A stretch of DNA of 63,317 nt, filler included, from Octopus bimaculoides (Eukaryota), in the NCBI RefSeq assembly GCF_001194135.2. It is 6 parts of 6 records of this genome, joined end to end, with 100 filler letters (N's around TTAATTAATTAA, not from the genome) between each part and the next. Parts side by side here need not be neighbours in the genome. Positions count along the whole stretch, not along the records: positions 1 to 20,278 come from NC_068996.1; 5 more parts are not named here. The stretch is one strand, 5' to 3'. A program made the position numbers and the translations under genes. Of this stretch, positions 12,259 to 20,108 are shown in pieces (positions within the stretch are counted from its first letter, which is position 1; each line of letters begins with the position of its first letter). A model generated the notes under the pieces. That model was given only the letters and a program-made list of their open reading frames with translations, searched no databases and had not been told where the DNA came from.

Positions 12259-12642
12259 AGGCATGACTGTATGGTAAGGAGCTTGCTTCCCAACCACATG
12301 GTTACTGGTTCAGTCCCACTGGACAAGTGTCTTCTACTATAGCCTTGGACCGATCAAAGCCTTGCGAGTGGATTTGGTAGATGGAAACTGAAAGAAACCC
12401 ATCGTATATATGTATATGTATATGTATATGTATATATGTGTGTGTTTGTCCCACCATCGCTTGGCAACCGATGCTGGTGTGTTTATATCCCCGTAACATA
12501 GCGGTTTGGCAAAAAGAGACCGATAGAATAAGTACTAGGCTTACAAAGAACAAGTCCTGGGGTCAATTTGCTCGACTAAAGGCGGTGCTCCAGCATGGCC
12601 GCAGTCAAATGACTGAAACAAGTAAAAGAGTAAGAGTAAAGA

Positions 12643-12643
<1 letters not shown>
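12259..12643 (+). mobile_element. SINE family A with a short internal deletion
   Basis: Head, body and the complete aaaggcggtgctccagcatggccgcagtcaaatgactgaaacaagtaaaagag tail. Decayed family A pieces also lie at about 11945-12258. Confidence 0.9.
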
Positions 12644-12677
<34 letters not shown>

Positions 12678-13769: not shown

Positions 13770-14015
13770 TGTGTGTGTGCTTGTGTGTGTGTTTTTGTAA
13801 TTATGTTTGTTCCTCCATCACCACTTGAAAACTGGAGTTGGTGTGTTTATATTCCTTTAACTTAACAGTTTGGCAAAAGAGACTGATAGAATAAGTACCA
13901 AACTTAAGAAAAAGCAAAGAAAGAAGTCCTGGGGGTGATTCATTTGACTAAAAAATTATACAAGGTAGTGCCTCAGCATGGCTGCAGTCTGATGACCAAA
14001 ACAAGTAAAAGATAA
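13770..14015 (+). mobile_element. SINE family A, 3' half, decayed
   Basis: tgtttgttcctccatcaccacttg...gactgatagaataagtacc...cagcatggctgcagtc...aacaagtaaaaga. Confidence 0.8.
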
Positions 14016-15113: not shown

Positions 15114-15622
15114 TCATCATCATCATCATCATCATCGTTTAACGTCCGCTTTCCATGCTGGCATGGGTTGGACGGTTTGACTGAGGAGTGGTGAAACCAG
15201 ATGGCTACACCAGGCTCCAATCTGATTTGGCAGAGTTTCTACAGCTGGATGCCCTTCCTAATGCCAACCACTCTGAGAGTGTAGAGGGTGCTTTTACATG
15301 CTACCGGCACGAAGGCAAGTCAGGCAGTACTGGCAATGGCCACGCTCAAAATGGTGTATTTTACATGCCACCTGCACAGGAGCCAGTCCAGGGGCACTGG
15401 CAACGATCTCGCTCAAATGTATTTACATGTGCCAGGAAGGCGATGCTGGGCACAGGTGCTATCACAATTTCGCTTTCGCTTGCCCCAACAGGTCTTTGCA
15501 AGCCGAGTTTAGTTCTAATGAAGAAGAGGTTGGCATGGGGGCCAGTCGTCGAATTTAGTTCAATTTCGATTTCACTTGCCTCAACGGGTCTTTGCAAGCA
15601 GAGTTTAGTGTCCAATGAACAA
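15114..15622 (-). mobile_element. Longest family C copy, with internal tandem modules
   Basis: (cat)n-cgtttaacgtccgctttccatg...ctggatgcccttcctaatgccaaccactc, then a 5' extension with two atttcg.ttc.cttgcc.caac.ggtctttgcaagc modules. Confidence 0.88.
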
Positions 15623-16619: not shown

Positions 16620-17290
16620 ATTCTTTTATTCTTTTACTTGTTTCAGTCACGTGACTGTGGCCATGCTGGAGCACCACCTTGAAGGATTTTAGTCAAACAA
16701 ACTGACCCCAGGAATTATTCTTTGCTTGCCTACTACTTATTTTATCAGTTCCTTTTGCCAAACCACTAAGTTACAAGGAGGTAAACACACCAACACCAAC
16801 TGTCAAGTGGTGAAAGTGGGAGCAGGGAACAAACACAGACACAAAAATACACACATGTAGATACACACACACACACATACATACAATGGGCTTCTTTCAG
16901 TTTCTTATTACTTTATTACCCACAAGGGGCTAAACATAGAGGGGACAAACAAGGACAGACAAAGGGATTAAGTCGATTACATCGACCCCAGTGCGTAACT
17001 GGTACTTAATTTATCGACCCCGAAAGGATGAAAGGCAAAGTCGACCTTGGCGGAATTTGAACTCAGAACGTAAAGACAGACAAAATACTGCTAAGCATTT
17101 CGCCCGGTGTGCTAACATTTCTGCCAGCTCCTCGCCAGCTTCTTTCAGTTTCTGCCTAGTAAATCCACTCACAATGCTTTGGTCGGCCTGAGGTTATAGT
17201 AGAAGACACTTACCCAAGGTGACACGCAGTGGGACTGAACTCAGAACCATGTGGTTGGGAAACAAGCTTCTTACCACACAGCCATATGTG
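16620..17290 (-). mobile_element. SINE family A interrupted by a family B insertion
   Basis: The 3' half (16620-16904) and 5' half (17138-17290) are colinear once 16905-17137 is removed. Confidence 0.88.
16905..17137 (-). mobile_element. Full-length SINE family B with a 15-bp target-site duplication
   Basis: gcttctttcagtttc at 16890-16904 and 17138-17152. Head ggcgaggagctggcagaaatgttagc, B box ctgagttcaaattcc, core ctttgcctttcatcctttcggggtcgataaattaagtaccag. Confidence 0.93.
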
Positions 17291-17736
17291 CACCTTTAGA
17301 TCATTAGTTTTTTTTATTTATTGACTCTGAAGGGAAGAAAGGTTAAACTAACCTCAACAGGAACTAAACTATGAGAGCCAAATTAAATAACGCAAGAAAT
17401 TCTATCAAATGCTTTAACGATGCTATTAATTTGCAGCCTTGTGAACACAGAGTTTTAATTTACACATGAATGACAGACGGTTTTAATTTAAGTGTAAGCT
17501 CTTTAAAATGAGAAGTTTTATAACTCAGAGACAGAGATGGTCTTAGATTGGTATTTAAAAAAAAAAAGGGGGGGTTAAATAGTATTTAAAACAGGATCAG
17601 CAATTCCTGGTGAAATTTGATCGTAGGAACTTTGGTCAAAAGGGACTGTCTTGATAGTTATTTAGGTCATGCACACCTAACCTTTTCCTCATAACAAACA
17701 ACAGTGATTTAATGATATTGGTTTCACATTTTGGCA

Positions 17737-17940: not shown

Positions 17941-18051
17941 TACAGCAGTGATATAATGATATTAATTGTGAAGTCTACAGCAATAAAGACAATCTTTTCA
18001 TTTTTATCTTTTACTTGTTTCAGTCATTAGATTGTGGCCATGCTAGGACGC

Positions 18052-18102
<51 letters not shown>

Positions 18103-18189
18103 TCTTTTATCTGTTTCAGTCATTTGACTGTGGTCATGCTGGAGCACTGCCTTTAGTCAAACAAATCGATCCCAGGACTTATTCTTATA

Positions 18190-18540
18190 TATATATAATA
18201 ATATAAATAATATATAGATATACGCATATATCCATATATATATGTACATATCTACATCTATATGTATACATACATGTATATATGGGTACAGGACATCAAA
18301 AAATAAACGTTAAACACAATGTAAAACAAAAACATAAAAACGAAAACAGAAAATGAACATTTTTCGAACAACGTAAAAAACAAACAGAGAAACGAGACAT
18401 ACAACATAAAGAGTATACCCCTTTGTCAGTTGTCCCTGTTTCATCTACTCCGCATTTCGAAGACAAGGACAATACATGACTTCGTTGAAACAGTCCTTCC
18501 CGCAAAGCAAATTAAATAAAATTTGGGATTAACCATCCTC
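18190..18540. repeat. Dispersed repeat family F, second copy
   Basis: Colinear with 13140-13428. Confidence 0.8.
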
Positions 18541-18889: not shown

Positions 18890-19160
18890 ACTTCCATCCC
18901 AGTGGCACGTAAAAAGCACCATCCGATCATGGTCAATGCCAGCATCTCTGGCTCCTATGCTAGTGGCACATAAAAAGCACCGACTACACTCTTGGAGTGG
19001 TTGGCCTTAGGAAGATCATCAAGCTGTAGAAACTTTGCCAGATCAGATTGGAGCCTGGTGCAGCCTCCTGGCTTGCCAGACACCTGTCGAACCGTCCAAC
19101 CCATGCCAGCATGGAAAATGGACGTTAAACGAAGATGGTGATGATGATGATGATGATGAT
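18890..19160 (+). mobile_element. Family C copy
   Basis: Two gtggcac.taaaaagcacc modules, gagtggttggccttaggaag, tail ggacgttaaacg(aag/gat)n. Confidence 0.87.
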
Positions 19161-19344: not shown

Positions 19345-19521
19345 ATATATATATACATGATTAGCTTCTTTTAGTTTCCATCTATCAAACCCATGAACAA
19401 GGCTTTGGTCGGCCCGAGGCAATAGTAGAGGACACTTGCTGAAGGTTCCATGCAGTTGGACTGAACCCAGAACCTTGTGGTTCGGAAGCAAGATTCTTAC
19501 CAAACAGCCACACCTGCACCT
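19345..19521 (-). mobile_element. SINE family A, 5' half
   Basis: Ends in cttaccaaacagccacacctgcacct. Confidence 0.82.
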
Positions 19522-19539
19522 ATATGTGTATACATACAT

Positions 19540-19590
<51 letters not shown>

Positions 19591-19614
19591 CATATATAGA
19601 TATACATATATATA

Positions 19615-19667
19615 CTCTTTTACTTGTTTCAGTTATTTGACTGCGGCCATGCTGGAGCACCGCCTTT
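19615..19667 (-). mobile_element. Family A-type 3' tail attached to the 5S-derived head
   Basis: Minus strand aaaggcggtgctccagcatggccgcagtcaaataactgaaacaagtaaaagag is almost identical to the tail at 12578-12629. Confidence 0.9.
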
Positions 19668-19679
19668 AAAGTGTTGGAT

Positions 19680-19794
19680 GCTTACAGCACCTAGGTTTCC
19701 CAAGCGGTCACCCATCTAAGTAGTCACTAGGCTCGACGTTGCTTAACTTCGGTGATCGGACGAGAACCGGTGCTCTCAGCCTGATACGGCCGTA
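19680..19794 (-). rRNA. 5S rRNA-derived sequence (retroposed copy or SINE3-like head, probably not a functional 5S gene)
   Basis: TACGGCCGTATCAGGCTGAGAGCACCGGTTCTCGTCCGATCACCGAAGTTAAGCAACGTCGAGCCTAGTGACTACTTAGATGGGTGACCGCTTGGGAAACCTAGGTGCTGTAAGC. The first 3 nt are missing, loop E is altered and there is no T4 terminator. Confidence 0.93.
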
Positions 19795-19849
19795 TATATA
19801 TAGATATATATATACAGACAGACATACACATATATATATAAACACATAC

Positions 19850-20000: not shown

Positions 20001-20108
20001 TCATCATCATCATCATCATCGTTTAACGTCCGCTTTCCATGCTAGCATGGGTTGGACGATTTGACTGAGGACTGGTGCAACCGGATGGCTACACCAGGCT
20101 CCAATCTA
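20001..20108 (-). mobile_element. Family C 3' fragment
   Basis: (cat)n-cgtttaacgtccgctttccatgctagcatgggttggacg...caccaggctccaatct. Confidence 0.88.

What the first reader, a model, noticed from the sequence alone, without database searches (positions are those of the whole stretch)
19615..19794. 5S rRNA head fused to the tail of a tRNA-type SINE: candidate SINE3-like family
Seen: a near full-length 5S sequence (minus strand) is followed by a 12-nt linker and then the same 3' tail used by SINE family A, with no T4 terminator in between. Helices stay paired (TACGG/CTGTA, CCTAG/CTAGG, CTTAG..TGG/CCG.CTTGGG) while loop E is altered. Known: 5S-derived SINEs use the type 1 Pol III promoter and borrow a LINE-recognised 3' tail. 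Inference: this is either one copy of a 5S-headed SINE family sharing a partner LINE with family A, or a single template-switch chimera. I cannot tell whether it is already catalogued.
Basis: partly seen in the sequence, partly recalled or inferred. Interest (0 to 1): 0.75.

Follow-up and report, generated by a model that had tools for sequence, protein, structure and literature searches.

The report
5S rRNA head on SINE tail
In an octopus-like genome, a nearly complete but degenerate 5S rRNA copy is joined in one piece to the 3' tail of the local major SINE; this is the build of a 5S-derived (SINE3-type) retroposon, but whether it belongs to a multi-copy family could not be tested here.

Summary
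Rfam finds a full-length 5S rRNA at 19679-19797 (minus strand, 86.5 bits, E 1e-17). An 11-nt linker (TCCAACAC+TTT) follows. Then comes a 54-nt tail that differs at 1 position from the consensus tail of the window's main SINE, which Octopus vulgaris also carries. There is no T4 terminator inside the element or for 680 nt downstream.

The head is not a working 5S gene. Real protostome 5S genes score 109-117 bits. Loop E, loop A and helix II are damaged, and nt 1-3 are missing. Box A (15/15) and box C (18/18) of the Pol III promoter are intact.

The damaging changes avoid the promoter boxes (p about 0.03). The head looks more diverged than the tail (p 0.02-0.12). The linker looks like the 3' trailer and U-tract of a Pol III primary transcript.

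Best reading (about 0.55): a retroposed copy of a 5S-headed, body-less SINE that uses the same LINE partner as the tRNA SINE. Main rival (about 0.3): a one-off template-switch chimera.

Copy number, the decisive test, could not be run. About 24,000 5S-derived loci are reported in the giant squid. I found no description of a 5S SINE in molluscs.

The parts
19795..19797 (-). ATA where 5S nt 1-3 should be. It is continuous with the upstream (TA)n. This is a 3-nt 5' truncation or the edge of the target site.
   Evidence: pairs 1-118 and 3-116 are broken. G1>A and C3>A against all canonical 5S genes compared.
19679..19794 (-). 5S rRNA-derived head, nt 4-119. It is 84% identical (98/116) to the closest genuine protostome 5S gene obtained.
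   Evidence: Rfam 86.5 bits; identities and 13 changes at 101 panel-invariant sites; 30/34 pairs.
19734..19748 (-). Box A of the type 1 Pol III internal control region (5S nt 50-64), AGTTAAGCAACGTCG. It is identical to canonical genes.
   Evidence: Box coordinates follow Xenopus numbering (established knowledge).
19726..19731 (-). Intermediate element (5S nt 67-72), CCTAGT. This segment also varies among genuine genes. G70>A is compensated in the RNA by C105>T.
19701..19718 (-). Box C (5S nt 80-97), TAGATGGGTGACCGCTTG. It matches two genuine 5S genes at 18/18 positions.
19723..19725 (-). Loop E, 5' strand, altered (T73>G, G75>C). The partner strand is altered too, at nt 102-103 (window 19695-19696). 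This destroys the conserved AGUA motif.
   Evidence: departure from the upper-case Rfam consensus G at nt 75.
19668..19678 (-). Linker TCCAACAC + TTT. It is read as the 3' trailer and U-tract of a Pol III primary transcript. The last T is shared with the tail.
   Evidence: Sequence. Genuine 5S genes have T4-T9 within 3-7 nt of the 3' end. No other copy of the linker exists in the window or in L003.
19615..19668 (-). 54-nt LINE-type 3' tail shared with the tRNA-derived SINE 'family A'. Two hairpins lie at 19645-19664 and 19630-19643. It ends in GTAAAAGAG. One difference from consensus (G>A at 19634) weakens hairpin 2.
   Evidence: alignment; 1/54 from consensus; fold -14.3 kcal/mol, z -2.3; 93.5% of cells paired across 9 copies.
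19798..19830 (.). Upstream (TA)n-rich flank, a possible target-site duplication partner. It may also act as a TATA-like upstream element.
   Evidence: 17/19 match with the downstream flank, not significant in microsatellite sequence.
19560..19614 (.). Downstream (TA)n flank, directly after the tail. Other family A copies have the same arrangement.
   Evidence: window 12631 onward, L003 18437 downward.
12577..12630 (+). Reference family A tail, identical to the consensus. The full family A copy runs from about 12300 to 12650.
4672..4725 (-). Family A tail, 2/54 from consensus.
9774..9827 (-). The same tail module behind an unrelated hairpin element. This is a third context for the tail, and it carries compensated stem changes.

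Best explanation
The element is a retroposed copy of a simple 5S rRNA-derived SINE (SINE3 type: head plus LINE-type tail, with no body) in an octopus-like genome.

Shown here: a 5S-derived head with box A and box C fully intact; no terminator; and a 54-nt structured tail identical in kind to that of the dominant tRNA-derived SINE.

Inferred mechanism:
- TFIIIA/TFIIIC/TFIIIB assemble on the internal control region, and Pol III starts at the element's first base.
- With no T-run present, transcription reads through the tail.
- The two tail hairpins and the terminal GTAAAAGA-like repeat are recognised by the reverse transcriptase of the same stringent-type LINE that moves family A.
- That LINE copies the RNA into TA-rich targets.

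Inferred origin: the lineage arose when the reverse transcriptase, copying a tail-bearing RNA, switched template about 54 nt from the 3' end onto the 3' end of a Pol III 5S-type primary transcript. That transcript's trailer and U-tract (UCCAACACUUU) survive as the linker.

This particular copy is probably dead. It lacks nt 1-3, has a weakened tail hairpin, and has no terminator for 680 nt.
For: (1) Anatomy.

(2) The head is not canonical 5S. It scores 86.5 bits against 109-117 bits for seven gene copies of genuine protostome 5S. It has 13 changes at 101 sites that are invariant in three genuine 5S types. These include loop A (A11>G), helix II (two broken pairs) and loop E (four changes).

(3) The changes spare the Pol III boxes. 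One of 34 box sites changed against 12 of 67 outside (p 0.028). With the conservative set of 8 damaging changes it is 0 of 34 against 8 of 67 (p 0.032). Box A is 15/15 and box C 18/18. Published SINE3 heads show the same pattern (PMC10886601).

(4) The tail is among the youngest of 10 copies (1/54 from consensus), while the head is 8-13% from canonical (p 0.017, or 0.12 with the conservative set). So the head was probably already diverged when it was joined or copied.

(5) The 3' boundary (GTAAAAGAG followed by (TA)n) is the same as in family A copies in two genomes, and the 5' boundary sits at the start of the 5S transcript. This points to one RNA-mediated insertion.

(6) The tail is a shared module found in at least three element contexts.

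(7) Precedent: about 24,000 5S-derived loci, 'likely SINEs', in the giant squid genome (PMC6962438).

(8) Meeting such an element in an arbitrary 20-kb window is far more likely if thousands of copies exist (inference).
Against: - Only one copy was seen. There is no second 5S-like sequence in the window or in 20.5 kb of O. vulgaris.
- Copy number, shared diagnostic substitutions and target-site duplications could not be tested.
- The species' own 5S gene was not available. Some of the 13 changes, notably the compensated pairs 14/65 and 70/105, may be its normal sequence. That weakens the head-versus-tail contrast to p 0.12.
- The statistics are modest and partly post hoc.
- I found no paper describing a 5S SINE in octopus or any mollusc.
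Confidence: 0.55

Rival explanations
1. A one-off chimeric retrocopy. While copying a family A (or LINE) RNA, the LINE reverse transcriptase switched template once to a 5S-type transcript. The product was inserted here and never propagated. This is the kind of event described for L1 with U6, 5S and other small RNAs in human.
For: The architecture fits exactly: a full-length small RNA at the 5' end, a 5'-truncated SINE 3' part, and the same orientation. 5'-truncated family A stubs are common in the window (18006-18059, 18102-18190), so the machinery truncates or switches often. Template switching to 5S is the published model for composite SINE heads (PMC4824008; PMC4758252). Only one copy was seen, and this copy has no terminator.
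Against: The most abundant acceptor RNA would be canonical 5S rRNA. The head instead carries 8-13 non-canonical changes that avoid the promoter boxes, while the co-inserted tail has 1/54. The linker implies an unprocessed primary transcript from a gene with an 8-nt trailer. The chance of meeting a unique event in a 20-kb window is very small (inference).
Confidence: 0.3
2. Two independent events lie side by side: a 5S pseudogene (a DNA-level or retroposed copy) next to an unrelated 5'-truncated family A tail fragment.
For: Truncated tail stubs do occur alone (18006-18059). The region is a dense patchwork of repeats and microsatellites.
Against: Both parts have the same orientation and are only 10-11 nt apart. 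No microsatellite or target sequence lies between them, although both outer boundaries abut (TA)n. The 5S part has no spacer or terminator of a 5S array. A stringent-type LINE would not be expected to mobilise 5S RNA without a tail (established knowledge of stringent LINE/SINE pairs).
Confidence: 0.07
3. A functional variant 5S rRNA gene or 5S-like RNA gene, or an assembly artefact that joined two repeats.
For: The Rfam score is well above the gathering score, the promoter boxes are intact, and 30/34 pairs hold. The window contains N gaps and many repeats.
Against: There is no terminator for 680 nt. The loop E G75 and loop A A11 positions are changed, helix II is broken and nt 1-3 are missing. 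The copy is solitary rather than in an array, whereas the Lottia 5S genes are in a tandem array. The junction lies in unique, gap-free sequence.
Confidence: 0.05

Closest known systems
SINE3 / 5S rRNA-derived SINEs (zebrafish SINE3, Kapitonov & Jurka 2003; lepidopteran HaSE3, PxSE4/5 and others; fruit-bat MEG; springhare Ped-1)
   Same: The head derives from 5S rRNA and keeps the type 1 Pol III internal promoter (box A, IE, box C). Conservation is higher in the promoter boxes than elsewhere in the head (PMC10886601). The 3' tail is of LINE type. There is no internal terminator.
   Different: There is no body or central domain (zebrafish SINE3 carries a Deu domain). The total length is only about 183 nt. 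The host is a cephalopod mollusc, a group not listed for 5S SINEs in a 2024 review (PMC10946416). Family status is unproven here. The head descends from the host lineage's own protostome-type 5S, so it shares nothing with those families beyond 5S itself.
Octopus tRNA-derived SINE 'family A' of this window (also present in O. vulgaris, L003)
   Same: The last 54 nt are shared (1 mismatch), with the same 3' end and the same (TA)n after it. The same partner LINE is therefore presumed.
   Different: The head differs (tRNA-like with a long body and an internal microsatellite, against 5S), and so does the promoter type (type 2 against type 1). Homology stops at (T)AAAGG.
Template-switch chimeric retrogenes (U6/5S/7SL-L1 or -Alu chimeras; Buzdin et al. 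2003, cited)
   Same: A full-length small Pol III RNA is fused to a 5'-truncated retroelement 3' part in one orientation. This is the likely birth mechanism.
   Different: Those are single-copy dead ends made from canonical cellular RNAs by L1. Here the head is diverged with its promoter spared, a trailer plus U-tract is retained, and the tail is a stem-loop type rather than poly(A).
5S-derived loci of the giant squid Architeuthis dux (about 24,000; PMC6962438)
   Same: A cephalopod genome with a massive excess of 5S-like loci, which the authors interpret as SINEs.
   Different: No sequences, structure or tail are described, so a relationship to this element cannot be assessed. Squids and octopods are distant lineages, so an independent origin is likely.
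UnaL2/UnaSINE1-type stringent LINE-SINE pairs (Kajikawa & Okada 2002, cited)
   Same: A short conserved 3' tail with a stem-loop and a terminal short repeat is shared between elements, as expected for recognition by the reverse transcriptase.
   Different: The partner LINE itself was not found in the window, and no experimental evidence exists here.

Membership tests
SINE (SINEBase definition, PMC3531059) of the 5S-derived class (SINE3) | At least 60% identity to 5S rRNA over at least 60 nt | tested here: met
   84% (98/116) to a genuine protostome 5S gene. Rfam 86.5 bits over the whole model.
SINE (SINEBase definition, PMC3531059) of the 5S-derived class (SINE3) | Short (<1 kb), interspersed, not tandem | tested here: met
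   183 nt, a solitary copy between microsatellites.
SINE (SINEBase definition, PMC3531059) of the 5S-derived class (SINE3) | [quoted passage not shown] | not testable with these tools
The viral, metagenome and prokaryote DNA collections lack this organism, since the control tail pattern also gave 0 hits. The protein routes found no other copy.
SINE (SINEBase definition, PMC3531059) of the 5S-derived class (SINE3) | [quoted passage not shown] | tested here: inconclusive
   Extra sequence is present (linker plus 54-nt tail). Non-canonical substitutions are present. Whether other copies share them is unknown.
SINE (SINEBase definition, PMC3531059) of the 5S-derived class (SINE3) | Intact type 1 Pol III internal promoter (box A, IE, box C) | tested here: met
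   Box A 15/15 and box C 18/18 identical to genuine genes. IE has one change, in a segment that also varies among genuine genes. Sequence level only; transcription was not tested.
SINE (SINEBase definition, PMC3531059) of the 5S-derived class (SINE3) | 3' tail shared with a partner LINE | tested here: inconclusive
   The tail is shared with at least two other non-autonomous element types and is structured. No LINE with this 3' end was found in the window or in L003.
Functional 5S rRNA gene | Conserved loop E / loop A, all helices paired, and a T-run terminator just after the 3' end | tested here: not met
   G75>C, A11>G, two broken helix II pairs and nt 1-3 absent. No T4 for 680 nt, against T4-T9 within 3-7 nt in genuine genes.
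One-off template-switch chimeric retrogene | Full-length small RNA 5' part plus 5'-truncated retroelement 3' part, in the same orientation | tested here: met
One-off template-switch chimeric retrogene | Single copy; 5' part matches the canonical cellular RNA at the time of insertion | tested here: inconclusive
   Copy number is untestable. The head is 8-13% from canonical while the tail is 2% from its consensus (p 0.017-0.12). The species' own 5S was not available.
One-off template-switch chimeric retrogene | Target-site duplications flanking the whole chimera | tested here: inconclusive
   Both flanks are (TA)n. The 17/19 match is uninformative in a microsatellite.

The most novel reading that the evidence does not exclude
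Octopods carry a so far undescribed 5S rRNA-derived SINE family, which would be the first SINE3-type family characterised in Mollusca. It is parasitic on the same LINE as the dominant octopus tRNA SINE. Its copies still carry the 3' trailer and U-tract of the founding Pol III transcript, which would be a direct molecular fossil of the template-switch birth of a SINE head.
Probability: 0.3. Interest if true: 0.6.

Novelty: new member of a known kind. Interest (0 to 1): 0.4.

Why it matters
5S-derived SINEs have arisen independently a handful of times. They are formally described only in vertebrates and insects. A cephalopod family would extend the kind to molluscs. It would also give sequence-level content to the unexplained roughly 24,000 5S-like loci reported in the giant squid.

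The very simple structure (head, transcript trailer, tail) would make it a clean natural example of how a new SINE is assembled, by template switching onto a Pol III primary transcript. It would also show how one LINE tail serves several non-autonomous families in genomes where SINE expansion is prominent.

If it is only a single chimera, it is an ordinary by-product of LINE activity.

Tried and rejected

(2) Junction pattern GCTGTAAGCN{0,30}GGTGCTCCAGCATGGCC in viral, metagenome and prokaryote-genome collections: 0 hits. The abundant family A tail used as a control also gave 0 hits, so these nulls say nothing.

(3) Protein-space detour.
- The junction-spanning peptide found no candidates and nothing relevant among 1.84 billion representatives. 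The single weak hit was a chance match to an unrelated 817-aa protein.
- A six-frame query of the head found only spurious ORFs over genuine 5S genes (Lottia, moth, metagenomes). None carried the element-specific changes.
- In that search every hit was at least 174 aa long. This suggests a length filter that would hide short ORFs.
- Exact look-ups of window ORFs, including two that overlap the element, are not on record.

(4) 20.5 kb of O. vulgaris (L003) contains family A but no 5S.

(5) Literature. I found no paper with the tail or 5S strings, none linking 5S-type SINE classes to octopus, and nothing in the O. minor paper or its supplements. The octopus genome paper and the 1983 invertebrate 5S paper are not held.

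(6) Rejected idea: that the many paired differences from vertebrate 5S show SINE-specific compensatory evolution. They are the normal protostome 5S sequence.

(7) Rejected idea: that the linker comes from an older family A subfamily with a 9-10-nt insert (16629, 13960). The similarity is limited to ATCC and is not convincing.

Full report
OBSERVATION

Rfam's 5S_rRNA model matches window 19679-19797 on the minus strand over its full length (model 1-120). The score is 86.5 bits and E 1.3e-17, against a gathering score of 38. It is the only real RNA-family hit in the window; the many miRNA-family rows are microsatellite hairpins far below threshold.

Read on the minus strand, the element is ATA-TACGGCC...GCTGTAAGCA (5S), then TCCAACAC-TTT, then AAAGGCGGTGCTCCAGCATGGCCGCAGTCAAATAACTGAAACAAGTAAAAGAG, then (TA)n.

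The last 54 nt are the 3' end of a repeat that occurs throughout the window. A 26-nt core is found 5 times against 0 expected by chance. A looser search finds 8 tails in the window and 2 in an Octopus vulgaris locus. Against the consensus of these 10 tails, the element's tail has one mismatch. That makes it the second closest to consensus; the range is 0-14 mismatches.

There is no run of four or more T between head and tail. None occurs on the sense strand until 680 nt from 5S nt 1.

WHAT GENOME THIS IS

A TE-like ORF in the window (7820-8221, minus strand) has a single database relative, a hypothetical protein of Octopus vulgaris at 61% identity. The 20.5-kb O. vulgaris locus around that gene carries the same SINE tail and body.

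All window copies read GTCCTGGGG where both O. vulgaris copies read GTCCCGGGG. The window is therefore probably from another Octopus species.

IS THE HEAD A NORMAL 5S?

No cephalopod 5S gene could be reached. Spurious ORFs over 5S arrays did give me genuine protostome 5S genes:
- a tandem array in the limpet Lottia gigantea (L001);
- three metagenome contigs carrying two further gene types (L002; L004 and L005).

These score 109-117 bits. They have all 34 model pairs intact in Lottia, and T4-T9 terminators 3-7 nt after the 3' end.

They show that much of what looks unusual against vertebrate 5S is simply protostome 5S. This applies to CACCGGTTCTCGTCCGATCACCGAAGTTAAGCAACGTCG and to TTAGATGGGTGACCGCTTGGG.

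Against this panel the head is at best 84% identical (98/116). It differs at 13 of the 101 sites that are invariant in the panel:
- A11>G in loop A.
- C17>G and T19>C, which break two helix II pairs.
- A23>G.
- T73>G and G75>C, with C102>A and A103>C, on the two strands of loop E.
- G116>A.
- Two pairs of changes that compensate each other in the RNA (C14>T with G65>A, and G70>A with C105>T).

Two compensated doubles among 13 random changes are expected in only about 1% of simulations. That part of the divergence therefore arose in an RNA under structural constraint. It may simply be the octopus lineage's own 5S.

The remaining eight changes damage features needed by a ribosomal 5S. None of them lies in the Pol III control boxes. 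Box A is 15/15 and box C 18/18 identical to genuine genes. The avoidance of the boxes is modestly significant: 1/34 against 12/67, p 0.028; with the conservative set, 0/34 against 8/67, p 0.032.

The head is also more diverged than the co-linear tail: 13/101 against 1/54, p 0.017; with the conservative set, 8/101, p 0.12.

Taken together, the head is a 5S derivative that kept its promoter and lost its rRNA features. It was probably already in that state when this copy was made. This is the pattern reported for SINE3 heads (PMC10886601).

THE LINKER

TCCAACAC followed by TTT sits exactly where a 5S gene has its short trailer and T-run. The tail homology begins at the next base, (T)AAAGG.

The simplest reading is a template switch by a reverse transcriptase. 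The enzyme was copying a tail-bearing RNA and switched about 54 nt from its 3' end onto the 3' end of an unprocessed Pol III 5S-type transcript ending in ...UCCAACACUUU. Template switching is the published model for composite SINE heads and for small-RNA chimeras (PMC4824008; PMC4758252). This step is inferred, not shown.

THE TAIL

The tail folds into two hairpins (-14.3 kcal/mol, z -2.3). Across nine copies, 93.5% of the pair cells hold. Two pairs are changed on both sides, both in the copy at 9774-9827; the statistical support is weak.

The tail occurs in several contexts:
- behind the tRNA-like SINE body (family A);
- behind an older subfamily with a 9-10-nt insert;
- as 5'-truncated stubs;
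- behind an unrelated hairpin element with 73-nt arms;
- behind the 5S head.

It ends in GTAAAAGAG-type short repeats, and (TA)n often follows directly, in both genomes. This is the behaviour of a LINE 3' recognition module of the stringent type. The LINE itself was not found.

BOUNDARIES

The 5' end lies at 5S nt 4, so nt 1-3 are replaced by ATA. Both flanks are (TA)n. A 17/19 flank match is compatible with a target-site duplication but is meaningless in a microsatellite.

The 5' limit is at the transcript start. No 5S spacer is present. The 3' limit is the same as in family A. All three points argue for one RNA-mediated insertion of head plus tail. They argue against two neighbouring events and against a displaced piece of a 5S array.

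FAMILY OR SINGLETON

This is the decisive question, and I could not answer it directly.
- The searchable DNA collections contain no DNA of this organism, as the negative control shows.
- Protein-space detours found no second copy.
- 20.5 kb of O. vulgaris has none.

Indirect arguments favour a family:
- the promoter is spared while the head is degraded, and the tail is near consensus;
- a unique event is very unlikely to turn up in an arbitrary 20-kb window;
- the giant squid has about 24,000 5S-derived loci that its authors regard as SINEs (PMC6962438).

Arguments against:
- there is a single observation;
- the p-values are modest and rest on a proxy panel instead of the species' own 5S;
- I could find no report of a 5S SINE in octopus or any mollusc. 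A 2024 review lists such SINEs only for reptiles, insects, fish and mammals (PMC10946416).

I put about 0.55 on a copy of a multi-copy 5S-headed SINE and about 0.3 on a one-off chimera. The rest is split between an independent juxtaposition and a gene or artefact.

VERDICT

If the family exists, it is a new member of a known kind (SINE3-type), of moderate interest. This copy itself is most likely inactive: it has no terminator, nt 1-3 are missing, and one tail hairpin is weakened by G>A at 19634.

Noticed in passing
window 9774-9996: The SINE tail module also sits directly behind an unrelated element made of a long hairpin (arms 9837-9909 and 9924-9996, 73 nt, 89% complementary). A tRNA-like SINE head follows immediately. 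This may be another non-autonomous family using the same LINE tail, or the LINE's own 3' UTR.
   Followed up: partly
window 16629-16682 and 13960-14013: An older tail subfamily (6 and 12 mismatches from consensus) carries a 9-10-nt insert between GACTAAA and AAGG that the young family A copies lack.
   Followed up: partly
window 12631 onward, 19614 downward; L003 18437 downward: (TA)n follows the tail directly in several copies in two genomes, and (GT)n follows it at 18101. This suggests insertion into microsatellites or microsatellite growth at the 3' end. Genuine 5S genes in L001 and L004 have TATA-like sequence upstream, so TA-rich targets might help new 5S-headed copies to be transcribed (speculation).
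   Followed up: no
window 246-284 (-), 15136-15174 (+), 19093-19131 (-), 20020-20058 (+): Another interspersed repeat, CGTTTAACGTCCGCTTTCCATGCTAGCATGGGTTGGACG, preceded by (ATC)n at 20003. There are four copies against 0 expected by chance.
   Followed up: partly
window 9614-9775, 17137-17298, 19363-19524, 4981-5090: Copies of a tRNA-like SINE head (76-80% identical to one another). ARAGORN calls none of them a tRNA. One copy lies only about 90 nt downstream of the 5S element on the same strand.
   Followed up: no
window 7820-8221 (-): A 133-aa ORF whose only database relative is a hypothetical protein of Octopus vulgaris (61% identity, no Pfam domain). It is probably part of an uncharacterised transposable element.
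   Followed up: partly
window about 3397-3860 and about 5300-6220; 6224-6256 = 6548-6580: Two runs of N (assembly gaps), and an exact 33-nt duplicate beside one of them. This may be an assembly artefact around a microsatellite.
   Followed up: no
L004 and L005 (ENA metagenome contigs): A genuine 5S gene lies next to a cluster of genes with histone-fold domains (Histone, Histone_H2A_C, CENP-T_C) in an unidentified eukaryote. This 5S type matches the element best at the sites that vary among genuine genes.
   Followed up: no
result list: With a 318-aa query, every hit of the search for homologous proteins was at least 174 aa long (about 55% of the query). This suggests a length filter, so the empty result for the 43-aa junction peptide may not cover long ORFs.
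   Followed up: no
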